Virus record (IMG/VR): IMGVR_UViG_3300047558_000137
Location: 310,001-374,000 of that record
DNA length: 64,000 nt
Strand: one strand, 5' to 3'
A model generated the notes under the pieces. That model was given only the letters and a program-made list of their open reading frames with translations. It was not told the DNA's origin and searched no databases. Shown one piece after another: positions 1 to 63,567 of the stretch. The position numbers and the translations under genes were made by a program. Each line of letters begins with the position of its first letter. The stretch's first letter is position 1.

Positions 1-18
1 TCTTACTAACGTGAAAGG

Positions 19-1136: not shown

Positions 1137-1213
1137 TGGCGACCCCGAATGGATTTGAACCACTGACATTTGGTTTTGGAGACCAACGTTCTGCCGGACT
1201 GAACTACGGAGCC
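1137..1213 (-). tRNA. trnW: tRNA-Trp(CCA)
   Basis: Cloverleaf GGCUCCG/CGGGGUC, anticodon arm UUGGU-CUCCAAA-ACCAA, T loop UUCAAAU, encoded CCA. Confidence 0.95.
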
Positions 1214-1221
1214 ATATTAAA

Positions 1222-1435
1222 TTTGTAAGTAGTGCTACCATCATTATAAGCACCATTCACCCTTTACGTAAAGCCTAGGCTGGGACTCGGTACGTTACTT
1301 GGGATTCATCCAGCCTGTGCGCCACTATGCACCCGAGTCTTCCGACCCGTTGGGAATCGAACCCACGACCTTTTACTGTTTAGGTAGTTCGAACATACCA
1401 TTAACAGCGTGACTTCACTTGCTAACACTTACAAA
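1222..1435 (-). ncRNA. Unidentified ~214-nt structured RNA with an internal T-arm (RNA1)
   Basis: Ends pair (UUUGUAAGU/ACUUACAAA). Internal hairpins include GUGGG-UUCGAUU-CCCA, CGGGUC-GGAA-GACUCG and AGGCUGG/CCAGCCU. Fills the gap between two tRNAs. Confidence 0.7.
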
Positions 1436-1438
1436 ACT

Positions 1439-1530
1439 TGGCGGAAGGCGGAGGAGTCGAACCCCATCCCCGTTAGGAGAACCTGGTTTTCAAGGCCAGT
1501 CGCAGGACCAACCCCGCTGCATCACCTTCC
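1439..1530 (-). tRNA. trnS: tRNA-Ser(UGA), non-canonical 8/4 acceptor/T-stem structure
   Basis: 8-bp acceptor GGAAGGUG/CGCCUUCC, 4-bp T stem GGGG/CCUC, long variable arm UCUCC-UAAC-GGGGA, anticodon loop CUUGAAA, G73, CCA. Confidence 0.88.
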
Positions 1531-1539
1531 ATAATAGAT

Positions 1540-1688
1540 TTTCTGAGTGACCAGCTATCTTTCTCAAGGACTCACTGGCTTGTCTCGTAGAGGAGAGTTT
1601 AAACTACCCGATGTTGCTACTGGTGTGTCAGTCTCAAGAATAGGGACCTAGCGCACCGGGGACTCAATCCAAACGTCTAACTCAGAAA
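1540..1688 (-). ncRNA. Unidentified ~149-nt structured RNA (RNA2)
   Basis: Ends pair (UUUCUGAGU/ACUCAGAAA); nested stems GUUUGGAUU/AGUUUAAAC, CCCGGUG/CAUCGGG, GCCAGU/GCUGGU with G.U pairs on the minus strand. Confidence 0.65.
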
Positions 1689-1690
1689 CT

Positions 1691-1763
1691 TGGTGGATCA
1701 ATGCGGGTTCGAACCGCTACTGAGACCCATAATGGCAATCCCAGTTACTCCTAGACTTGACCC
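1691..1763 (-). ncRNA. tRNA-like mini-RNA resembling the tmRNA tRNA-like domain (G3.U70, A73, no D stem, no canonical anticodon loop)
   Basis: Acceptor GGGUCAA/UUGAUCC-A-CCA, unpaired 11-nt D region, 8-bp stem ACUGGGAU/GUCUCAGU, T arm GCGG-UUCGAAC-CCGC. Confidence 0.7.
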
Positions 1764-1769
1764 ATAACT

Positions 1770-1844
1770 TGGTGGAAGTAGCTAGATTCGAACTAGCGAT
1801 AGTTACCGTATGAAGGTAGTGCATTACCACTTTGCTATACTTCC
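1770..1844 (-). tRNA. trnM: tRNA with CAU anticodon (probably elongator Met)
   Basis: Acceptor GGAAGUA/UACUUCC, anticodon arm UACC-UUCAUAC-GGUA, T arm GCUAG-UUCGAAU-CUAGC, CCA. Confidence 0.88.
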
Positions 1845-1845
1845 A

Positions 1846-1939
1846 GTATTCTAAAACACATTAGTTGCCTAGCTTTGTCCCGGCAGTCGTTACCCGTCAA
1901 AAGGATAAAGAGCGTTTCATCTAATATGCTTTAGAATAC
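1846..1939 (-). ncRNA. Unidentified ~94-nt RNA closed by a 19-bp stem (RNA3)
   Basis: GUAUUCUAAAGCAUAUUAG pairs with CUAAUGUGUUUUAGAAUAC using two G.U pairs; inner stem CUUUAUCC/GGACAAAG. Confidence 0.55.
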
Positions 1940-1952
1940 CCTGCATTTCTGC

Positions 1953-2081
1953 AGGATATGATAGGGTTGATACCCTACCCAGTTATTTGTACTCTGCCGT
2001 TATCGCCAGCATTTCATCCAACTGTCCGCCCGTTTGTGGCATGTTTTAAGTGCGCCACCCAGTCCTCGTTACTGGTATCCT
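1953..2081 (-). ncRNA. Unidentified ~129-nt multi-hairpin RNA (RNA4)
   Basis: AGGAUA/UAUCCU closes hairpins CCAGU/ACUGG, GUGGC/GCCAC, CAGUUG/UAACUG (with inner UGCUG/CGGCA) and GGUAGGGU/ACCCUAUC. Confidence 0.6.
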
Positions 2082-2091
2082 TCACACTACT

Positions 2092-2256
2092 CTACGGTTG
2101 TAAAGTACGTTCTTCCTGAACTTTTCTGGAACGATAGTGCCTTTCGGCCCGTTCCATCTTATCTTGGATCAACTTGTGTAGCTGTTCCTTAGTAAGAGTA
2201 TGTTCAGTTGTGAACTTTACTTCTCGCATACGTTGTTTCAAATTCACTTGTTTCAT
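2092..2256 (-). CDS. Small basic hypothetical protein, 54 aa (MKQVNLKQRM...)
   Basis: AGGA Shine-Dalgarno 7 nt before the ATG at 2256; the ORF-track start at 2274 lies in the terminator U tract. Confidence 0.6.
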   Translation of the reverse strand: MKQVNLKQRMREVKFTTEHTLTKEQLHKLIQDKMERAERHYRSRKVQEERTLQP

Positions 2257-2272
2257 TTTCTTTCCTACAAAC

Positions 2273-2303
2273 AAAAAACCCTAGGGTTTTTAGTCCTAGG
2301 GTT
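2273..2303 (-). terminator. Intrinsic terminator (attenuator)
   Basis: AACCCUAGG-9 nt-CCUAGGGUU followed by a U run; its 5' arm GGAACCCU (2298-2305) is complementary to AGGGUUCC at 2354-2361. Confidence 0.8.
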
Positions 2304-2333
2304 CCTTTTAGTTTAGAATGTAAGTTTGTTTAC

Positions 2334-2477
2334 TTAACCATCCCATCCCTCTCGGAACCCTGTTGTAATCTCTGGTGTGCGATCACTATTTGTATTCGCA
2401 AACAAAGACCAATAGGCTGACATGCCTAGTCCGGGCTGTTGTTGTTTAAGCGAATGACAGAATGTGTGTTGCATCAT
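2334..2477 (-). CDS. Putative 47-aa attenuator leader peptide
   Basis: MMQHTFCHSLKQQQPGLGMSAYWSLFANTNSDRTPEITTGFREGWDG*. ATG is 7 nt after a -10 box and preceded by AGGA; contains the antiterminator sequence. Confidence 0.6.
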   Translation of the reverse strand: MMQHTFCHSLKQQQPGLGMSAYWSLFANTNSDRTPEITTGFREGWDG

Positions 2478-2484
2478 GTTTCCT

Positions 2485-2513
2485 ATTGTATTTTATTTAT
2501 CTCTTTGTGTCAA
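2485..2513 (-). promoter_or_regulatory. Composite sigma70 + late promoter
   Basis: TTGACA-N17-TACAAT with TAAATA inside the spacer. Confidence 0.8.
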
Positions 2514-2547
2514 CCACTATATCAAATAGTGGTAAAATTGTTCATTT

Positions 2548-2638
2548 TGGTAGGAGAGACCGGAGTCGAACCGATATCAGCCAATTATCTGTTGCTACGG
2601 GGTATAAGCCCGCCGTTTTACCATTAAACTACTCTCCC
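2548..2638 (-). tRNA. trnI: tRNA-Ile(UAU) with an atypical long variable arm
   Basis: Anticodon arm GCGGG-CUUAUAC-CCCGU, ~21-nt variable region, T arm AUCGG-UUCGACU-CCGGU, A73, CCA. Confidence 0.85.
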
Positions 2639-2797: not shown

Positions 2798-2826
2798 ATT
2801 GTAATTTATTTATCTTTTACTGTCAA
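2798..2826 (-). promoter_or_regulatory. Composite sigma70 + late promoter
   Basis: TTGACA-N17-TACAAT with AGATAAATAAA in the spacer; near copy of 2485-2513. Confidence 0.8.
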
Positions 2827-3683
2827 ATGACTTTTGCATCTGTACAGCTCTTGCATAAACTGCCGCTATTGTAGCAAGGTTCTGCATTCAGTGCAAGCAA
2901 TTTGGTAAATTCAGGACCTGTAAACAAATCTTCATACTTTTGTGTTAAAAGATTGCCCAGCACATGCTTGGTATCGTAGTCCATACAGCATAATACTACA
3001 TCTCCATTAGGCAACAAAACGTTTTGGTCATATAGACTTGTTTTACCGCAAACTACGGGCTTTTTGTGTTCTATAGTAAACACAACAGGTTGCTCTTTGA
3101 TCTGCTCTTTGTTTAATGTACCTGCACGATCATGGGCCGCAATACTCCAATCATGACTGACGTATACCCCGGGTAAATGGCGAATTGCTGGATGCACTCC
3201 ATGATCACTCATGGCCATTGCTTCGTAATGTATACCTGCTGCCTGTACAATTTCACGCATACCAATGTAGGCGTATTCCCATTCTTCACTGAGCTTCCAA
3301 CCCTTCATGTTACCTGCTTCGTCAGGAAAGTGTATCTTGAATATGTCAACTTGGCCTGCATGATTTAGTAACAGTTCGCCTACTCTATGTACTGTAGTTT
3401 CGTCCCAGTTGTATAGTGTAGTAAAGATGGCAACTTGCCTATCATTTTCTAGGGCATACTCTAGCATGTCTGTACAGGCCGGATTAACCCAGGGTTCTGC
3501 CATGCCAGAAAAGTCAATACGACAATCCCATGGTAGTCGATCTACTACTGTTTTAAATGTATCCAAGCTCATATACTTGGCATCTTCTTTACCATATGCA
3601 TCACGTAGGTTGTCTTGTGGACAAAACGTACACATTAGGGGACAACCAATCATGGTTGTTATTTCCATTGTTTTGTGGCTCAT
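2823..3683 (-). CDS. Radical SAM protein with SPASM/twitch domain
   Basis: CxxxCxxC (GCPLMCTFC), SGMAEP, C-terminal NGDVVLCCMDY...GNL...CKSC. Confidence 0.85.
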   Translation of the reverse strand: MSHKTMEITTMIGCPLMCTFCPQDNLRDAYGKEDAKYMSLDTFKTVVDRLPWDCRIDFSGMAEPWVNPACTDMLEYALENDRQVAIFTTLYNWDETTVHRVGELLLNHAGQVDIFKIHFPDEAGNMKGWKLSEEWEYAYIGMREIVQAAGIHYEAMAMSDHGVHPAIRHLPGVYVSHDWSIAAHDRAGTLNKEQIKEQPVVFTIEHKKPVVCGKTSLYDQNVLLPNGDVVLCCMDYDTKHVLGNLLTQKYEDLFTGPEFTKLLALNAEPCYNSGSLCKSCTDAKVI

Positions 3684-3922
3684 GACTTATTTAACTGTGC
3701 CCAAGCGAGCCAGGATCTAAAACTTTCATAGACCGCTTGCGCTTCTTTATCATCTTGATCGATTCGTACTCCACGCACATAGAAACCATTATGGCTCACA
3801 CGTAGCATTTCTTCTGAACCTGAATGAAAAATAATGCTATTTTTTGCCGCTTCAATTGCATCTACATCGATACTAAACAACTTTTTTGGGGGTTGTTCGT
3901 AGTTAAACTGAGAGGTGGTCAT
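3680..3922 (-). CDS. Hypothetical protein
   Basis: 80 aa ORF overlapping both neighbours in the operon (ATGA junction at 3680-3683). Confidence 0.65.
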   Translation of the reverse strand: MTTSQFNYEQPPKKLFSIDVDAIEAAKNSIIFHSGSEEMLRVSHNGFYVRGVRIDQDDKEAQAVYESFRSWLAWAQLNKS

Positions 3923-4259
3923 GCTTAATTTCCCTTACTGGATCGCCCAATGCTTCGGCTAGGTTGTTCTTAATTGTAACACGTATGTTATTATAATTAC
4001 GAATTTCAACTGCTCTGCGCCCAATCTCCTCGTAGCCTAGGTTGTCTTCTAGTCCGCGACGTAGATCGCTTTCCAATGCCCAAATGCTTAGATGCACAAC
4101 TTCTAGTCGCTCAAGCAATGGCTGTACAGGTTCTAGATCAAATCTTTTGGCCTGTTCAGCATAGTAATCGTATTCAGCTTGGTTACCTAGACCTTTATCT
4201 AGTTTAATCTTGGCAATTACTAATCGATCTAATAGTTCTACTACTGGGAAAAATATCAT
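3903..4259 (-). CDS. Conserved hypothetical coiled-coil protein (DUF6165-like)
   Basis: ELLDRLVIAKIK...IWALESDLR...NNIRVTIKN pattern; ATGA coupling to the upstream gene. Confidence 0.6.
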   Translation of the reverse strand: MIFFPVVELLDRLVIAKIKLDKGLGNQAEYDYYAEQAKRFDLEPVQPLLERLEVVHLSIWALESDLRRGLEDNLGYEEIGRRAVEIRNYNNIRVTIKNNLAEALGDPVREIKHDHLSV

Positions 4260-5365
4260 ACGTACTTCTTAAATTGTTCTAATGTTAAGTCAGGAAGATT
4301 AATGTAATCTGTGTCTGCATATTGTGGCAGTGCATCAATTAAGATTTTATACAAATCAAAATAGACTTCTTCTGCTAAACGATACATAATCATTCTGTTA
4401 TGCTGACGAATTTCTTGTGTTGGCTCAACAAGTTTTACATCAGATTTAACTAAGCGTTCAACTTCTGCGGCCACTGCACGTAGGCGCTCTCCTGGATACT
4501 CTAGACTATCGTAAGACTCATCTATTAGATCGCCAAACGTTTTAAACCCAAAGGCATGTAAGTGTCTAAGTGTATATTGCCCGCCTACTACAAGAAATGG
4601 ATGCCCAACTAATAACGGCTTGTATGTTTTCTCTGTTACAAAGGTTTCGTTAGGTGCTGTTTCCAATGCTAGACTAAATTCTGTGTGCCAGTAATGCGGC
4701 GGATAGAAGTTTTCAAATCTAAAATCTTCATGGAAGTTTGCATTGGGCCAATCAATGATTGGCTTAACATCTAGTTCAGTACGATCGGGAATTCTGTAAT
4801 CAATGAAGCTGTGGATGCTTTGATTTAAGATATCTCGTTCAATCAGTTCCTTAAACATTTCTTCTCTATTGTGTCGGCGTGTGCCATTTAAGAAAAGATA
4901 TTTAAAAGTCTTTGGAAATGTGCTGATACCATCTGCGGTATATGCAAGTCTAGCACGATTAAACTCTGTAGTTAGTCTATAGACAAAATACTTGTCTAGA
5001 TTGTGTTCAACGAAACCATCAACTGCCCTATTGCCTTGCTTAACCAAGTGAATAGGTATGCGTCTACGCACATAGTCCCTAGTGGGGTAATAACTACTGC
5101 TTAGTGTACTTTCACACTCACTTGGATAGTAGAAAATAATTGGAATGCCCAGGCTAGCACAACGATCAATAATTTGCTTGGCATAGTCGCCATCGTTGCC
5201 CGGGACTTCTTCAACAAAGGCATCTGTTATTACAGCATCGCCTGTAATATCTTCTGGATTTTTTACAATGGTGTAGGGTATGTTATACAGTTCCAGTACT
5301 GTAGTTAATAATCGATTTCTTGCACTACTAGGCCCAAGGGTCTGTCGAATTAAAAAATTTATCAT
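4256..5365 (-). CDS. Glycosyltransferase-like protein (GT10-like 'TEKT' family)
   Basis: FSLALET...FVTEKTYKPLLVGHPFL...GFKTF...IDESYD. Start moved to the ATG at 5365 because the ORF-track N-terminus runs through a tRNA. Confidence 0.6.
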   Translation of the reverse strand: MINFLIRQTLGPSSARNRLLTTVLELYNIPYTIVKNPEDITGDAVITDAFVEEVPGNDGDYAKQIIDRCASLGIPIIFYYPSECESTLSSSYYPTRDYVRRRIPIHLVKQGNRAVDGFVEHNLDKYFVYRLTTEFNRARLAYTADGISTFPKTFKYLFLNGTRRHNREEMFKELIERDILNQSIHSFIDYRIPDRTELDVKPIIDWPNANFHEDFRFENFYPPHYWHTEFSLALETAPNETFVTEKTYKPLLVGHPFLVVGGQYTLRHLHAFGFKTFGDLIDESYDSLEYPGERLRAVAAEVERLVKSDVKLVEPTQEIRQHNRMIMYRLAEEVYFDLYKILIDALPQYADTDYINLPDLTLEQFKKYV

Positions 5366-5371
5366 GTTATA

Positions 5372-5448
5372 TGGTGCGGATGGTGGGACTCGAACCCACA
5401 AAATTTGGCTTCTAAGACCAACACGTATACCAATTCCATCACATCCGC
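5372..5448 (-). tRNA. trnL: tRNA-Leu(UAG), short variable loop
   Basis: Acceptor GCGGAUG/CAUCCGC, anticodon arm UUGGU-CUUAGAA-GCCAA, 5-nt variable loop, A73, CCA. Confidence 0.9.
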
Positions 5449-5459
5449 GTATGTGATCT

Positions 5460-5488
5460 AGTATAGTGTATATATCTTTATTTGTCAA
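5460..5488 (-). promoter_or_regulatory. sigma70 promoter for tRNA-Leu(UAG)
   Basis: TTGACA-N17-TATACT, 11 nt before the tRNA. Confidence 0.8.
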
Positions 5489-7082
5489 GCGGGTATAGCA
5501 TTTTATAAAAATCTTTTGATGCAATACCTGTTAAACTTTGTTCTCTATACTTTTCACCCAGTTGATTAAAATACTCGATTGCCAGTGATTCAGTGTCCGA
5601 ATCTAATTCTGTTAATAATCCCTCTGTCGGTATATCATAGTATGTAGCCTGCGATACCCAAACACTCCTAGACCATAGATACTTTTTATTTCTAGCATCA
5701 ACAACATTTCTTCTACTTGTATTATTAATTAAATCATACAACATTTGAATCGAGTTTTGCTGCCTACCAACTTCTCTCATGTTTTCCCAATAAGGAGTAT
5801 CCTTTTTGCAAAGATGAAAGGCAAAACGAATACGTAGTAGTGTATCTGCCATACGCATATTAACATACTCGTTGAAGTCTTCTTTCCATGTGCAGTCTAA
5901 ATTTGTATCTGTTTTTAGATTGTCTACAACAAATTCAATTTTGCCTAGTGCAGTTGAAAAAGCATTAGCATCATACGCATCTACTAATCCATGACTTAGC
6001 CCTATTGTTATACAATTATTAACAAATGCTTTTTCTTGGTATCCAGGCTCCCATGAAATTAATCTAAAGTCTACATCTGTTTTACCAGTTTTTTGGTAAT
6101 ACTCATCCTTTAGTGATTCAACATTGGTTGTATGGCGAGAATTGAATACATATCCCTCGCCACTACGAACATCCATTGCTACACTAAAATGCCAACCTTG
6201 ATCCATTGCACGAATGTATGCATTGCTAGTTCGTTCGTTATCGTCGGTATATTTGTGTGGCCCAACAATGCATCTATCATTGAATGAATCATCTAGATGC
6301 TTAAACTTGTAGGGTAATTTTTTGCACAAAACTCTAGCGAAGCCAGTGCAGTCAAAATATAGATCTGCTGTTGCATGTGAGTCATCGTCTAATAGTAGAT
6401 AATCAATATCGCCATTTTCTTTTAACACAACATCCTTAATTGCAATAGGTAACTCTTTAACACCGGCTGGCTTGCCTACCATATTATGAACCACTGCCCC
6501 AATTCGCATAGCATTAATATGATATCCAAATGTGCCACGTGGATGATTCCATTGCCCGGTTGTTATATTATAAGGTATTCTATCGTTACGCGAATACCAA
6601 TAAGATTGGCTTGAATGTCCTGTATATAAATCCTTAGGAGTTCTATACTCTAATTGATTTAGTAGGCCTTTATTTTTTAAGTACAACCATACATCGAGCA
6701 TATCATATGGTGTTTGCGATTTATAAAAAGATGAATACTTTACTGCATCTATTCCACTCTCTTTAAAATCATTAAGTATTCCCATGTTAGGAACATCAGC
6801 ATGATTTGTGTAGAAAACTGAATTGCTGTTATCCCAGTCCTGAAACCGAGACCCTACTCGAAATATCGATCCCGATTCTTTAATCCATTTAATATCTTTT
6901 TCAAACCCTAGCACCTTGTTCATAAAAGATGATGAGTTCCATTGTAGTGCTTCTCCTACTCCCACCACTGGAGTTTTTGGATCGTATATAAGTGTTACGT
7001 CTAGATCTGGTCTATTACGCTTAATAGCAGATGATACAAAATTGCCGGCTGCGCCAGCGCCAACAACAATTATTTTTTTCAT
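5478..7082 (-). CDS. Tryptophan-halogenase-family flavoprotein (degenerate catalytic motifs)
   Basis: GAGAAG FAD motif, VGVGEA, GYHINA, ADLYFDCTGF, GYVF, IGLSHG. Start moved to MKKIIVVG at 7082, after the tRNA. Confidence 0.85.
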   Translation of the reverse strand: MKKIIVVGAGAAGNFVSSAIKRNRPDLDVTLIYDPKTPVVGVGEALQWNSSSFMNKVLGFEKDIKWIKESGSIFRVGSRFQDWDNSNSVFYTNHADVPNMGILNDFKESGIDAVKYSSFYKSQTPYDMLDVWLYLKNKGLLNQLEYRTPKDLYTGHSSQSYWYSRNDRIPYNITTGQWNHPRGTFGYHINAMRIGAVVHNMVGKPAGVKELPIAIKDVVLKENGDIDYLLLDDDSHATADLYFDCTGFARVLCKKLPYKFKHLDDSFNDRCIVGPHKYTDDNERTSNAYIRAMDQGWHFSVAMDVRSGEGYVFNSRHTTNVESLKDEYYQKTGKTDVDFRLISWEPGYQEKAFVNNCITIGLSHGLVDAYDANAFSTALGKIEFVVDNLKTDTNLDCTWKEDFNEYVNMRMADTLLRIRFAFHLCKKDTPYWENMREVGRQQNSIQMLYDLINNTSRRNVVDARNKKYLWSRSVWVSQATYYDIPTEGLLTELDSDTESLAIEYFNQLGEKYREQSLTGIASKDFYKMLYPLDK

Positions 7083-7090
7083 AGATAAAA

Positions 7091-7167
7091 TGGTGCGCCC
7101 GGAGGGACTTGAACCCGCGACCAATGGATTATGAGTCCACTGCTCTAACCAACTGAGCTACAGGCGC
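7091..7167 (-). tRNA. trnI: tRNA-Ile2(CAU), lysidine type (Met not excluded)
   Basis: Anticodon arm GUGGA-CUCAUAA-UCCAU; C4-G69 and C5-G68 TilS-type determinants; CCA. Confidence 0.85.
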
Positions 7168-15106: not shown

Positions 15107-15691
15107 ATGTCAAATACTCTTTTACTCAATGCAAACTATGATCCAATTTCGATTCTGCCACTGAGCGTAATCAATTGGCAACATGCACTAAAGTTGTACT
15201 TCTTAGATCGTGTTACGATTATAGAATCCTACGACGATTGGGTAGTACGCAGTGAAAAGCTCACTATCAACGTGCCCAGCGTTTGCGTGACTAAAGAATA
15301 CTTTAACTACAAAAGAGCAGTTAAGTTTAGTCGTGCCAACATGTATCTACGTGATTTGTATACTTGCCAATATTGTGGCGAAGTATTTCAAAGTACAGCA
15401 CTAACCATCGACCACGTGATTCCACGTATGGCTGGCGGTAAGACTAACTTTGAAAACTGTGTAACTAGTTGCAAGCCATGTAACCATCGCAAGGGTAGCA
15501 AGCTGATGAAGCCACTGCGTGAGCCTTATAAGCCTGATTACTATAGTTTGGTTGCTAAATGGAAGGATCGCAAGATCCATGTGCCAAAGGCATCATGGTA
15601 TCAGTATCTAGGTATTAAGAATCCTGCCCTGGCAGAGGACGCTGTTGATACTGAGGGTGCTTATCTAGGTAACTTTCGATTTGACGTCTAA
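15107..15691 (+). CDS. HNH endonuclease (McrA-like)
   Basis: RDLYTCQYCG...LTIDHVIP...GGKTNFENCVTSCKPCNHRKG. Confidence 0.92.
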   Translation: MSNTLLLNANYDPISILPLSVINWQHALKLYFLDRVTIIESYDDWVVRSEKLTINVPSVCVTKEYFNYKRAVKFSRANMYLRDLYTCQYCGEVFQSTALTIDHVIPRMAGGKTNFENCVTSCKPCNHRKGSKLMKPLREPYKPDYYSLVAKWKDRKIHVPKASWYQYLGIKNPALAEDAVDTEGAYLGNFRFDV

Positions 15692-63209: not shown

Positions 63210-63567
63210 ATGTAGTATTCATCTAGATTAAGTGGTCACACTTTGCCCGCACAGGGCAAAAAATGACTTCATCTGAGTTGCACAGTCACTTAGCGTTACA
63301 TCAATTACAGAGGCGGTTGTCCGGTACCTCGAGATGCGTCTTATCACAACGGCGGGCTAATATCTATACGCTAACATACATATTAACCGTGCTCAATCAC
63401 TTGAGCGTCTTTTTAGCTTTTATTACTCTATTCAAATAACCAAACCGTAGCATTTACGATCGACGTCCTGTTAAGGATGGTGGTTAAGCACTCTAGTCAG
63501 CATAGAGATTTCCGTCCCCCTTTTTATCGGGTTGTCACTAGGCACCTGAACTTAGCCGGTGCGAGCC
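63210..63567 (-). ncRNA. Unidentified ~360-nt highly structured RNA downstream of the GIY-YIG gene
   Basis: About a dozen helices, a GUGA tetraloop, a 7-bp pseudoknot UUAGCGU/ACGCUAA, G.U pairs indicating the minus strand; no long ORF. Confidence 0.65.

What the first reader, a model, noticed from the sequence alone, without database searches (positions are those of the whole stretch)
1137..2513. Attenuator-gated operon in which tRNAs alternate with unknown structured RNAs
Seen, in transcription order: composite promoter, 47-codon leader, terminator, 54-aa ORF, RNA4, RNA3, tRNA-Met, TLD-like RNA, RNA2, 8/4 tRNA-Ser, RNA1, tRNA-Trp. Spacers within the RNA array are only 1-13 nt, and every gap is a discrete RNA closed by an end-to-end helix. 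Known: host tRNA processing releases sequences flanked by tRNAs, and phage tRNAs can offset host anticodon-nuclease defences. Inference: an inducible translation-rescue or counter-defence RNA cassette that uses tRNAs as punctuation. I do not recognise this as a described system.
Basis: partly seen in the sequence, partly recalled or inferred. Interest (0 to 1): 0.85.

Follow-up and report, generated by a model that had tools for sequence, protein, structure and literature searches.

The report
Attenuator-gated phage tRNA and ncRNA operon
A giant uncultured phage puts a ribosome-sensing on/off switch in front of a long string of tRNA genes, and three widespread, uncatalogued families of folded RNAs sit flush between those tRNAs; this suggests the phage makes its own translation kit mainly when protein synthesis falters.

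Summary
All listed parts are on the minus strand of window 1137-2513: sigma-70 promoter, 47-codon ORF, intrinsic terminator, 54-aa ORF, structured RNA (RNA4+RNA3, one family), tRNA-Met, a tRNA-Ala-like RNA without an anticodon loop, RNA2, an 8/4 tRNA-Ser(UGA), RNA1 and tRNA-Trp.

Relatives from IMG/VR show three things.

1. The leader and terminator form a real attenuator. A segment inside the leader ORF pairs with the 5' arm of the terminator. It covaries with that arm, including at positions outside the terminator stem. The ORF is kept in one frame, with its stop between the two segments. The module heads tRNA arrays even in loci fetched by the terminator pattern alone.
2. RNA1, RNA2 and RNA4+3 are conserved families with strong covariation. 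RNA1 and RNA2 each matched at least 120 viral contigs. They lie flush between tRNAs. They have no Rfam 15 match and no match in cultured phages.
3. RNA1 carries a circularly permuted tRNA-like module of the bacterial Y-RNA (YrlA) type.

The 8/4 tRNA-Ser is already published. T4 rnaC/rnaD and GOLLD/ROOL are precedents for stable RNAs in or near phage tRNA clusters. What the three RNAs do, and any counter-defence role, remain untested.

The parts
2485..2544 (-). Promoter region. Strong sigma-70-type promoter (-35 TTGACA 2513-2508, 17-nt spacer, -10 TACAAT 2490-2485), overlapped upstream by a weaker match (2544-2516). The -10 box ends 7 nt before the leader ATG, so the leader mRNA is nearly leaderless.
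   Evidence: 11 of 12 and 9 of 12 matches. The same TTGACA-17-TAYAAT arrangement precedes the leader in L008, L044, L088 and L049.
2334..2477 (-). Leader ORF, 47 codons (MMQHTFCHSLKQQQPGLGMSAYWSLFANTNSDRTPEITTGFREGWDG*). The conserved W and D-R-T-P-E codons (2384-2370) lie just upstream of antiterminator region 2.
   Evidence: There are 82 distinct homologous peptides. In 55 of 60 modules an ATG ORF of at least 25 codons ends between regions 2 and 3, against 2 of 88 in the other frames. Arg and Pro codons show synonymous variation.
2354..2361 (-). Attenuator region 2 (AGGGUUCC), inside the leader ORF. Its 3' end is 17 nt before the stop codon. It pairs with region 3 to form the antiterminator.
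   Evidence: Perfect 8-bp complement in the window. Covariation across 83 modules: A-U 42, G-C 15, G.U 12 at one position; C-G 47, U-A 19, U.G 11 at a second; C-G 57, U-A 19 at a third.
2317..2345 (-). Small hairpin that contains the leader stop codon (UAAGU...ACUUA core). It lies in the loop of the antiterminator and may be an RNA polymerase pause element.
   Evidence: The stem changes compensatorily between window, L044 and L088. The pause role is inference.
2272..2305 (-). Intrinsic terminator: region 3 (GGAACCCUAGG, 2305-2295), loop, then region 4 plus U-tract (CCUAGGGUUUUUUG, 2285-2272).
   Evidence: With region 2 masked, the segment folds into a 13-bp hairpin followed by the U-tract. The terminator stretch (GAACCCUAGG...CCCUAGGGUUUUUUG) is identical in L008.
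2092..2256 (-). ORF2, 54 aa, basic and helical. Conserved in some relatives (for example L088), replaced by a different small coiled-coil ORF in others (L008, L044), and absent in arrays where tRNAs follow the terminator directly.
   Evidence: No Pfam or PHROG hit.
1845..2091 (-). RNA4+RNA3, one structured-RNA family (model covers 2074-1845). It has conserved-loop hairpins (AACGAGG; GCACUNUAAACAU), the conserved stretch AAACGGGCGGACAG, two further hairpins, and a 19-bp helix that closes the 3' domain. It always heads the array and is never preceded by a tRNA.
   Evidence: z = -5.25; 27 of 41 pairs with compensatory changes in 26 sequences. No Rfam hit at E<=10.
1770..1844 (-). tRNA-Met (CAU)
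   Evidence: 64.9 bits
1691..1763 (-). tRNA-Ala-like RNA ('TLD-like'), 73 nt. It has a 7-bp acceptor stem with G3:U70, A73 and CCA, a 4-bp T arm with loop UUCGAAC, and no canonical anticodon stem-loop.
   Evidence: Not called by ARAGORN or Rfam. No exact homologue in IMG/VR. Similar anticodon-less G3:U70/ACCA genes occur in L248, L341, L375, L219 and L254.
1531..1690 (-). RNA2, about 160 nt: three-way junction closed by an end-to-end helix. Invariant stretches are UAGACG, GAGUCCC, UAAACU, CGAGACA and GAGUCC...GAUAG.
   Evidence: 95.8% of cells paired; covariation 0.419 against 0.173 in shuffles, 0 of 500 as high; 165.5 bits to model R1. No Rfam hit.
1439..1530 (-). (8/4) tRNA-Ser(UGA): 8-bp acceptor stem, 4-bp T stem, long variable arm, G73, CCA.
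   Evidence: Published class. 83% identical to an unannotated copy in Pseudomonas phage PHB09.
1214..1438 (-). RNA1, about 225 nt. It has an end-to-end helix, two long-range helices and a UUCGAA hairpin. It also has a circularly permuted tRNA-like module, in the order V-like, T arm, GNRA-capped acceptor-like hairpin, D-like hairpin with GG.
   Evidence: 97.8% paired; covariation 0.410 against 0.145, 0 of 500; 206 bits to model R2. The only Rfam signal is the T arm.
1137..1213 (-). tRNA-Trp (CCA). The array continues beyond the window start, after a 367-aa ORF (1122-19), with at least 14 more tRNAs.
   Evidence: L001

Best explanation
This is the regulated head of the phage's large tRNA operon.

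Transcription starts at a strong sigma-70 promoter and immediately enters a 47-codon leader ORF. Near the 3' end of that ORF, a short segment (region 2, AGGGUUCC) can pair with the 5' arm of the downstream terminator hairpin (region 3). That pairing excludes the terminator (regions 3:4).

- If a ribosome translates through region 2 to the stop codon while RNA polymerase makes regions 3-4, region 2 is masked. The terminator forms and transcription stops.
- If leader translation is absent, slow or stalled upstream (the conserved Y/N-D-R-T-P-E codons lie just 5' of region 2), the antiterminator forms. Polymerase then reads into ORF2, RNA4+3 and the array.

So phage tRNA output would be coupled inversely to translational capacity.

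The read-through transcript is a polycistronic precursor. Host tRNA-processing enzymes cut it: RNase P at each tRNA 5' end, and 3' trimming or RNase E in the conserved CCA-AGUU context. This releases the tRNAs, including an (8/4) tRNA-Ser(UGA) and an alanine-identity tRNA-like RNA. It also releases three autonomous structured RNAs.

RNA1 contains a YrlA-type permuted tRNA mimic, so it most likely binds a protein or RNA that recognises the tRNA elbow and acceptor. The activities of RNA2 and RNA4+3 are unknown.

Shown: the sequence elements, their conservation, the covariation, and the position relative to tRNAs. Inferred: ribosome coupling, the direction of regulation, processing, accumulation, and all trans functions.
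For: Attenuator:
- The window leader folds by MFE into the antiterminator. With region 2 masked it folds into a 13-bp terminator.
- 61 of 85 distinct modules have a perfect Watson-Crick complement of at least 7 nt to region 3, at a fixed upstream position. Shuffled upstream sequence gives a mean of 2.5 nt.
- Anchored pair counts show compensatory changes. These include positions i=3..5, which lie outside the terminator stem.
- Divergent members carry 9-13-bp antiterminators of different sequence, for example L154, L049, L155 and L070.
- 55 of 60 modules keep an ATG ORF of at least 25 codons whose stop lies between regions 2 and 3, against 2 of 88 in other frames. The median gap is 17 nt from region 2 to the stop and 26 nt from the stop to region 3.
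- C-termini differ by frame-shifting indels while the nucleotides AGGGUYC persist.
- Of 54 loci fetched by the terminator pattern alone, 50 have a same-strand tRNA within 1 kb downstream. The median is 12.5 same-strand tRNAs downstream.

RNAs:
- Covariation statistics are strong for all three families.
- RNA1 and RNA2 each matched at least 120 IMG/VR contigs.
- 89 of 119 RNA1 copies start within 10 nt of an upstream tRNA 3' end, and 79 of 119 end within 10 nt of the next tRNA. The neighbouring tRNAs vary.
- The tRNA-like module of RNA1 is recurrent: 58 of 75 show the two hairpins, with an acceptor-like loop of GGAA in 39, and the D-like loop contains GG in 58 of 75. The order V-T-AS-D is as described for YrlA (PMC4201824).
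- T4 has two stable RNAs flush with tRNA-Arg.
Against: - There are no expression, end-mapping or ribosome-profiling data.
- No region-1 (anti-antiterminator) helix was found. The device therefore differs from trp-type attenuators, and read-through would be its default state. Efficient termination then needs tight transcription-translation coupling on a nearly leaderless mRNA, which is unproven.
- A ribosome paused at the stop codon only abuts region 2 (17 nt).
- The leader peptide is more conserved (W, DRTPE) than classical leader peptides. It could therefore have a role of its own, for example as an arrest peptide. It could also be a substrate of the radical-SAM enzymes that are frequent near these arrays.
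- RNA1 does not match the Rfam YrlA model, and no TROVE/Ro60 gene was seen among neighbouring ORFs.
- The TLD-like RNA is unique in sequence.
- Most loci for the first association test were fetched through tRNA-array features. Only remove that bias.
Confidence: 0.7

Rival explanations
1. The leader is an ordinary small-protein gene with its own terminator. It might encode a RiPP-type precursor or an arrest peptide linked to the neighbouring radical-SAM/SPASM and halogenase genes. The tRNA array would then be expressed by constitutive leak-through or from upstream promoters, and the region 2:3 complementarity would be incidental.
For: - The peptide motifs W and DRTPE are conserved in 82 variants.
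- A radical-SAM/SPASM gene lies directly upstream.
- 29 of 105 ORFs near such arrays are radical-SAM enzymes.
- A second identical-type promoter lies upstream at 2826-2798, with no terminator before the leader.
Against: - Region 2 covaries with region 3 at positions that the terminator stem does not constrain.
- The C-terminal reading frame drifts while the RNA segment is kept.
- The stop codon is always placed between regions 2 and 3.
- The module is tied to tRNA arrays rather than to radical-SAM genes.
- The two readings are not exclusive.
Confidence: 0.15
2. The inter-tRNA RNAs are cis-acting parts of the precursor (folding, spacing, or RNase entry or protection elements that help tRNA maturation). 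They would be degraded after processing, with no trans function.
For: - They are flush with tRNAs, and a conserved AGUU follows the upstream CCA.
- There is no associated protein gene.
- Their neighbouring tRNAs vary.
Against: - Sizes of 160-230 nt, long invariant single-stranded stretches, long-range helices and a tRNA-mimic module are far more than spacing needs.
- Most tRNA junctions in the same arrays are only 2-10 nt with no such element.
- T4 rnaC/rnaD are annotated in the T4 record as small, stable RNAs.
Confidence: 0.15
3. The spacers are decayed tRNA genes, or divergent members of known families (tmRNA, RNase P RNA, GOLLD/ROOL, group I intron, Y RNA).
For: - T-arm-like hairpins occur in RNA1.
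- GOLLD and ROOL lie near phage tRNA islands.
- The arrays contain many aberrant tRNA-like genes.
Against: - There are no Rfam 15 matches at E<=10 when each RNA is searched alone.
- The conserved non-tRNA architecture, closed by end-to-end helices, covaries.
- RNA1 has no CCA end.
- There is no tag reading frame.
- Models R1 and R2 do not find T4 rnaC/rnaD.
Confidence: 0.05
4. The RNAs are counter-defence decoys. These would be tRNA mimics or ligands that sequester host tRNA-targeting nucleases or sensors, made together with replacement tRNAs when the host attacks translation.
For: - The attenuator logic switches the array on when translation falters.
- RNA1 and the TLD-like RNA mimic tRNA parts while lacking an anticodon loop.
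- Published cases exist of phage tRNAs countering tRNA-cleaving defences (abstract of PMC13096335).
Against: - There is no direct evidence.
- RNA2 and RNA4+3 show no tRNA-like features.
- No defence or anti-defence genes were identified next to the array.
Confidence: 0.25

Closest known systems
Ribosome-dependent (leader-peptide) transcription attenuators of amino-acid operons (trp, his, phe, leu, thr)
   Same: A short leader ORF, an intrinsic terminator, and a mutually exclusive antiterminator that uses the terminator's 5' arm. The ribosome's position on the leader decides which helix forms.
   Different: It controls a tRNA/ncRNA array of a phage rather than biosynthetic genes. No 1:2 (protector/pause) helix was found, so the untranslated RNA defaults to read-through. 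The leader is long (median 48 codons), nearly leaderless, and has a conserved peptide motif instead of a run of one codon.
Phage T4 stable RNAs rnaC (species 1) and rnaD (species 2) in the T4 tRNA cluster
   Same: Non-tRNA stable RNAs encoded flush (1-6 nt) with a tRNA at the end of a phage tRNA cluster. rnaC contains a T-arm-like hairpin. The window phage has T4-type structural genes.
   Different: No sequence or covariance-model similarity to RNA1 or RNA2. The RNAs here are larger and sit between tRNAs, not only at the end.
GOLLD and ROOL large ornate RNAs of phages and prophages
   Same: Large structured RNAs of unknown function, encoded in phages and often near tRNA islands. tRNAs sometimes lie inside GOLLD (PMC12286853).
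   Different: No match to the Rfam models. The RNAs here are 160-230 nt (GOLLD often exceeds 800 nt; ROOL is about 580 nt from my own recollection). They occur independently of one another.
Bacterial Y RNA YrlA (Ro60/Rsr-associated tRNA mimic)
   Same: RNA1 has 5' and 3' ends paired in a stem. It also has an internal module in the order V-like, T arm, closed acceptor-like stem-loop and D-like arm, which is the YrlA topology (PMC4201824).
   Different: RNA1 is about twice as long, with extra conserved domains. It does not hit Rfam YrlA. The GNCGAA(N)G Ro-binding motif was not recognised by eye. No TROVE gene was seen nearby. It is embedded in tRNA arrays rather than next to rsr.
(8/4) tRNA-Ser / allo-tRNA class (Mukai et al. 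2017)
   Same: The gene at 1530-1439 has an 8-bp acceptor stem, a 4-bp T stem, a long variable arm, G73 and a serine anticodon, and sits in a phage tRNA cluster, exactly as published.
   Different: Nothing essential. This part of the finding is already known.
tmRNA tRNA-like domain and alanine minihelices
   Same: The TLD-like RNA has G3:U70, A73, CCA and a T arm but no anticodon loop. This is the acceptor-stem signature that marks tRNA-Ala and tmRNA for alanylation by AlaRS (established knowledge).
   Different: It is only 73 nt, with no mRNA-like part and no pseudoknots. ARAGORN and Rfam tmRNA do not call it.

Membership tests
Ribosome-dependent transcription attenuator | Translatable leader ORF upstream of the terminator | tested here: met
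   ATG ORF of 47 codons in the window. 55 of 60 modules keep an ORF of at least 25 codons in one frame, against 2 of 88 in other frames. Translation itself was not shown.
Ribosome-dependent transcription attenuator | Intrinsic terminator (G+C-rich hairpin plus U-tract) before the regulated genes | tested here: met
   107 of 111 modules have a hairpin followed by T5 or more.
Ribosome-dependent transcription attenuator | Alternative antiterminator helix that shares a strand with the terminator and is supported by covariation | tested here: met
   Compensatory changes include positions outside the terminator stem.
Ribosome-dependent transcription attenuator | Region 1:2 protector/pause helix and a run of regulatory codons for one amino acid | tested here: not met
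   No conserved upstream complement to region 2 was seen by inspecting the window fold and the leader alignment; this was not a dedicated search. The conserved codons are D-R-T-P-E and W, not a homocodon run.
Ribosome-dependent transcription attenuator | Read-through responds to ribosome stalling | not testable with these tools
   Needs reporter or in vitro transcription-translation assays.
(8/4) tRNA-Ser (allo-tRNA group) | 12-bp acceptor branch split 8/4, long variable arm, G73, serine anticodon | tested here: met
   The 8th pair covaries between G-C and A-U, the T stem between GGGG/CCUC and GGAG/CUUC, and the anticodon loop is CUUGAAA. Definition from PMC5389517.
Y RNA / YrlA | Stem formed by the 5' and 3' ends, plus a tRNA-like module in the order V, T, acceptor-like stem-loop, D | tested here: met
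Y RNA / YrlA | Match to the family covariance model (Rfam RF02553) | tested here: not met
   no YrlA hit at E<=10 on RNA1
Y RNA / YrlA | Encoded next to, and bound by, a Ro60/TROVE protein | tested here: inconclusive
   TROVE is not among the 25 most frequent Pfam families in 105 neighbouring ORFs. Only 15 kb or less per contig was examined, and binding is not testable here.
GOLLD / ROOL | Match to the family models RF01998 / RF03087 (accession numbers from memory) and a length of about 580-800 nt | tested here: not met
   no hits. The RNAs are 160-230 nt.
tmRNA | tRNA-like domain plus a tag reading frame and pseudoknots | tested here: not met
   ARAGORN finds none. Rfam tmRNA matches only a 15-nt T arm in RNA1. 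The TLD-like RNA is 73 nt with no coding part.
T4 rnaC / rnaD | Sequence or structure homology to the T4 RNAs | tested here: not met

The most novel reading that the evidence does not exclude
A widespread group of uncultured phages, with large tRNA arrays and genome contigs of up to about 370 kb, may run an autonomous, feedback-controlled 'translation kit'. In this reading a leader-peptide attenuator senses ribosome progress on codons read by the phage's own tRNAs. When translation falters, it opens an operon that supplies a near-complete tRNA set. The same operon supplies three new classes of trans-acting structured RNAs. RNA1 would be a Y-RNA-like tRNA mimic. An alanine-accepting, anticodon-less tRNA-like RNA accompanies them. 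These RNAs would act on the host translation or tRNA-surveillance machinery.
Probability: 0.3. Interest if true: 0.9.

Novelty: new variant of a known kind. Interest (0 to 1): 0.8.

Why it matters
Why phages carry tRNA genes, and how those genes are regulated, is still debated. I found no described attenuator in front of a phage tRNA operon.

A ribosome-sensing switch would make one idea directly testable: that phage tRNAs are a conditional response to translational stress, such as codon demand, host tRNA loss or anticodon nucleases.

The three RNA families are abundant (RNA1 and RNA2 each in at least 120 viral contigs), structurally complex, and absent from Rfam 15 and from cultured phages. 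They are good candidates for new RNA biology, in the same open category as T4 rnaC/rnaD, GOLLD and ROOL. RNA1 would extend Y-RNA-type tRNA mimicry to phage tRNA arrays.

Practically, covariance models for these RNAs, for the 8/4 tRNA-Ser and for the other tRNA-like genes that ARAGORN misses would improve phage genome annotation.

Tried and rejected
- **Rfam.** Gathering and permissive searches of the whole region and of each RNA alone gave nothing beyond tRNAs, a sub-threshold tRNA-Sec hit for the 8/4 tRNA, and a 15-nt T arm.
- **blastn against 50,697 phage records.** Only the 8/4 tRNA (PHB09) and tRNA-Trp matched. RNA1 and RNA2 had no match.
- **RNase P idea for RNA1.** GAAAGUCAC...GCU resembles CR-I as I recall it, and GGGUGAAUGG resembles the J11/12 region. 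I dropped it. The putative P4 pairing does not covary. The varying base pairs instead with GUGUYAGC, and Rfam RNase P models do not hit.
- **Two-piece or permuted tmRNA for TLD+RNA2.** Rejected. The TLD closes its own acceptor stem, and the apparent reading frame in RNA2 lies in covarying helices.
- **Antitermination (lambda N/nut-like or put-like) role for ORF2 and RNA4.** Not pursued, because they lie downstream of the terminator.
- **Exact-pattern search for the TLD.** It found only the window's own contig.
- **Neighbouring proteins.** The 367-aa ORF (19-1122) has no Pfam or PHROG hit and only weak glycosyltransferase-like leads.
- **TROVE/Ro60 search** among 105 neighbouring ORFs was inconclusive.
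- **Supplement of the 10,006-csRNA paper** is not held, so I could not check whether these motifs are listed there.
- **Single-sequence folding z-scores** for RNA1 and TLD+RNA2 were not significant.


Full report
**Source and orientation.** The window is part of IMGVR_UViG_3300047558_000137, a 374-kb viral contig. It carries T4-type structural genes: tail sheath, portal, terminase, gp15-like and baseplate proteins. No close relative exists among 50,697 GenBank phage records. Everything in the finding lies on the minus strand and is read from 2544 down to 1137.

**Checking the observation.**
- ARAGORN and Rfam confirm tRNA-Met (1844-1770) and tRNA-Trp (1213-1137).
- A near-consensus sigma-70 promoter (TTGACA-17-TACAAT, 2513-2485) overlaps a weaker one (2544-2516).
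- A 47-codon ORF (2477-2334) starts 7 nt after the -10 box.
- A G+C-rich hairpin with a U6 tract follows (2305-2272), then a 54-aa ORF (2256-2092).
- The '8/4 tRNA-Ser' (1530-1439) is missed by ARAGORN and scores below threshold for Rfam tRNA-Sec. By hand it folds with an 8-bp acceptor stem, a 4-bp T stem, a long variable arm, anticodon loop CUUGAAA, G73 and CCA.
- A 30-nt core pattern of this tRNA matched at least 120 IMG/VR stretches. In 95 distinct sequences the eighth acceptor pair switches between G-C and A-U, and the T stem between GGGG/CCUC and GGAG/CUUC.
- In the arrays it usually sits beside tRNA-Ser(GCU), and usually no other Ser(UGA) gene is present. It is therefore the array's tRNA-Ser(UGA).
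- This class was published by Mukai et al. 2017, who found (8/4) tRNA-Ser in phage tRNA clusters. An unannotated copy exists in Pseudomonas phage PHB09.

**The inter-tRNA RNAs are real families.** The loci fetched through the 8/4 tRNA turned out to contain homologues of RNA1, RNA2, RNA4+3 and the leader/terminator. Dedicated pattern scans found at least 120 stretches each for RNA1 and RNA2. Profile searches over 380 loci gave 104, 70 and 28 distinct full-length sequences of RNA1, RNA2 and RNA4+3.

| Family | Alignment | Support |
|---|---|---|
| RNA1 | 74 sequences, 35 pairs | 97.8% of cells paired; 22 pairs with double changes; covariation 0.410 against 0.145 in shuffles (0 of 500) and at most 0.069 when partners are slid |
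| RNA2 | 45 sequences, 32 pairs | 95.8% paired; covariation 0.419 against 0.173 in shuffles (0 of 500) and at most 0.105 slid |
| RNA4+3 | 26 sequences, 41 pairs | 27 pairs with compensatory changes |

Position also supports discrete RNAs. Of 119 RNA1 copies with an upstream tRNA in the locus, 89 begin within 10 nt of its 3' end, and 79 of 119 end within 10 nt of the next tRNA. For RNA2 the figures are 46 of 79 and 56 of 76. The neighbouring tRNA identities vary. RNA4+3 is never preceded by a tRNA and always heads the array.

None of the RNAs matches any of 4,227 Rfam 15 families, even at E<=10 when searched alone. blastn finds none in cultured phages. In 185,579 species genomes the RNA1 pattern occurs only on three MAG contigs, which look like phage DNA.

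**Anatomy of the RNAs.**
- *RNA1 (about 225 nt).* It has an end-to-end helix. A long-range helix joins GUGUYAGC to AAGURACG; the Y/R pair covaries 39 C-G to 29 U-A. There is a second long-range helix, a UUCGAA-loop hairpin and two 3' hairpins.
- *The tRNA-like module of RNA1.* Between those elements lies a module in the order V-like segment, T arm (GGGUUCRAYNCCC), a 6-8-bp hairpin, two nucleotides, and a D-like hairpin. The 6-8-bp hairpin is capped mostly by GGAA (39 cases). The loop of the D-like hairpin contains GG in 58 of 75.
- *What that module resembles.* It is a circularly permuted tRNA whose acceptor stem is closed by a loop. That is the topology described for the bacterial Y RNA YrlA. 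Membership in that family is not established. The Rfam model does not hit, and no TROVE gene was found among neighbouring ORFs.
- *RNA2 (about 160 nt).* A three-way junction with long invariant stretches.
- *RNA4+3.* Two hairpins whose stems change completely while the loops (AACGAGG, GCACUNUAAACAU) stay fixed, the invariant stretch AAACGGGCGGACAG, and a long closing helix in the 3' domain. Relatives such as L008 and L044 carry an extra inserted domain.
- *TLD-like RNA (1763-1691).* It has G3:U70, A73, CCA and a T arm, but no canonical anticodon stem-loop. It has no sequence relatives. A scan for cloverleaf ends that ARAGORN missed found 149 distinct non-canonical tRNA-like genes in these loci. 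They include a recurrent anticodon-less G3:U70/ACCA type.

**The attenuator.** The leader/terminator module was found in 111 loci, with 82 distinct peptides. The peptides share a W and a (S/N)(Y/N)DRTPE motif. Their C-termini differ by frame-shifting indels while the nucleotides AGGGUYC are retained. That pointed to an RNA-level constraint.

- *The pairing.* This segment (window 2361-2354, AGGGUUCC) is the perfect complement of GGAACCCU, the 5' arm of the terminator plus two upstream bases. In 85 distinct modules the longest perfect complement to that arm averages 6.4 nt, against 2.5 nt for shuffled upstream sequence, and 61 have 7 nt or more.
- *Covariation.* Anchored pair counts over 83 modules give a 7-bp core. 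One position shows A-U 42, G-C 15, G.U 12. Another shows C-G 47, U-A 19, U.G 11. A third shows C-G 57, U-A 19. The last two positions lie outside the terminator stem, so they are not explained by terminator conservation.
- *Divergent members.* They carry antiterminators of different sequence, 9-13 bp long.
- *Reading frame.* In 55 of 60 modules an ATG ORF of at least 25 codons ends between the two segments, against 2 of 88 in the other frames. The median distance is 17 nt from region 2 to the stop and 26 nt from the stop to region 3.
- *Folding.* The untranslated window leader folds into the antiterminator. With region 2 masked, a 13-bp terminator forms.
- *Association with tRNA arrays.* Most loci had been fetched through tRNA-array features, so I repeated the association test on 67 new loci fetched by the terminator pattern alone. 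Of 54 with at least 1 kb downstream, 50 have a same-strand tRNA within 1 kb, and the median is 12.5 tRNAs downstream.

**Mechanism.**
- *Shown:* a leader ORF, a terminator and a mutually exclusive, covarying antiterminator whose upstream strand lies inside the ORF. The module is specifically placed before tRNA arrays.
- *Inferred:* a ribosome translating the last third of the leader masks region 2, so that the terminator forms. Absent, slow or stalled translation lets the antiterminator form and opens the array. Stalling might occur at the conserved D-R-T-P-E codons, which start 20-29 nt before region 2.
- *Difference from trp-type attenuators:* I found no protector (1:2) helix, so read-through would be the default state.
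- *Further inference:* processing of the read-through transcript by RNase P and 3' maturation enzymes would free the tRNAs and the three RNAs. The conserved AGUU after each CCA may be a cleavage context.

**Comparison with what is known.**
- The closest regulatory relatives are the leader-peptide attenuators.
- For the RNAs, the closest relatives are T4 rnaC/rnaD, which lie 1 and 6 nt from their neighbours at the end of the T4 tRNA cluster. They are not homologous. GOLLD and ROOL near tRNA islands are a second precedent, and YrlA for RNA1 a third.
- Literature searches found no attenuator described for phage tRNA operons. These RNAs may be among the 10,006 unnamed candidate structured RNAs predicted from IMG/VR. 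I could not check this.

**Verdict.**
- The attenuator interpretation is supported by comparative evidence.
- The counter-defence and translation-rescue function is plausible but untested.
- One component, the 8/4 tRNA-Ser, is already known.
- The combination of a ribosome-sensing gate on a phage tRNA operon with three uncatalogued, widespread structured RNA families is a new variant of known kinds. It deserves experimental follow-up.

Noticed in passing
window 2548-2638 (-): A 91-nt 'tRNA-Ile(UAU)' with a long variable arm and A73 (class II shape). 91-96-nt copies recur in many arrays, next to tRNA-Ser(GCU) and the 8/4 tRNA-Ser. Its amino-acid identity is unclear. Compare the allo-tRNA(UAU) group of Mukai et al. 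2017.
   Followed up: partly
window 63434-63567 (-): Full-length match to the orphan Polynucleobacter-1 RNA motif (RF01718, 79.8 bits against a threshold of 37). This hints at a freshwater betaproteobacterial host range.
   Followed up: no
window 2823-7088 (-), and loci L008-L043: A radical-SAM/SPASM enzyme, two small ORFs, a weak peptidase-like ORF and a tryptophan halogenase lie just upstream, interleaved with tRNAs. In a Pfam survey of 105 non-redundant ORFs near such tRNA arrays, 29 are radical-SAM enzymes, and there are also 5 B12-binding, 3 halogenase and 2 TauD hits. This is a possible peptide- or RNA-modification theme. A link to the conserved leader peptide is not excluded.
   Followed up: partly
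many loci, e.g. L341:1799-1887, L139:6691-6779, L248:7126-7200, L047:2758-2843: ARAGORN misses 149 distinct cloverleaf-ended genes in these arrays. They include an 87-89-nt tRNA-Tyr(GUA) variant with a CCCC...GGGG pairing between the D and variable regions. There is also a recurrent anticodon-less G3:U70/ACCA tRNA-Ala-like RNA, and several unannotated tRNA-like genes in cultured Pseudomonas phage PHB09.
   Followed up: partly
window 2798-2826 (-) and 2485-2513 (-): Two copies of the same promoter type (TTGACA, a 17-nt spacer containing GATAAATAAA, then TACAAT). One lies before tRNA-Leu/tRNA-Ile(UAU) and one before the leader. The same spacer motif appears in L008, L044 and L088, which suggests a phage-specific early-promoter signature.
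   Followed up: no
L384:1909-2172 (T4 rnaC, rnaD): The two classical T4 stable RNAs have no Rfam family. rnaC contains a perfect T-arm hairpin and gets only a 17.5-bit tRNA-Sec hit. rnaD ends in CACCA.
   Followed up: partly
L381, L382, L383 (genome contigs): The only 'bacterial genome' matches to RNA1 are short or phage-like contigs in MAGs labelled Bifidobacterium, Aquiluna and Kapaibacterium. L381 also carries RNA2. These are probably phage contigs binned into MAGs.
   Followed up: partly
window 5372-5448 and 7091-7167 (-): tRNA-Leu(UAG) and a second tRNA-Met lie between protein genes. The mechanical ORF list extends TTG-started ORFs (4256-5524 and 5478-7124) across them, which is an artefact to avoid in annotation.
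   Followed up: yes
window 15107-15691 (+): An HNH endonuclease gene lies on the opposite strand, next to the terminase large subunit gene, in an otherwise minus-strand block.
   Followed up: no
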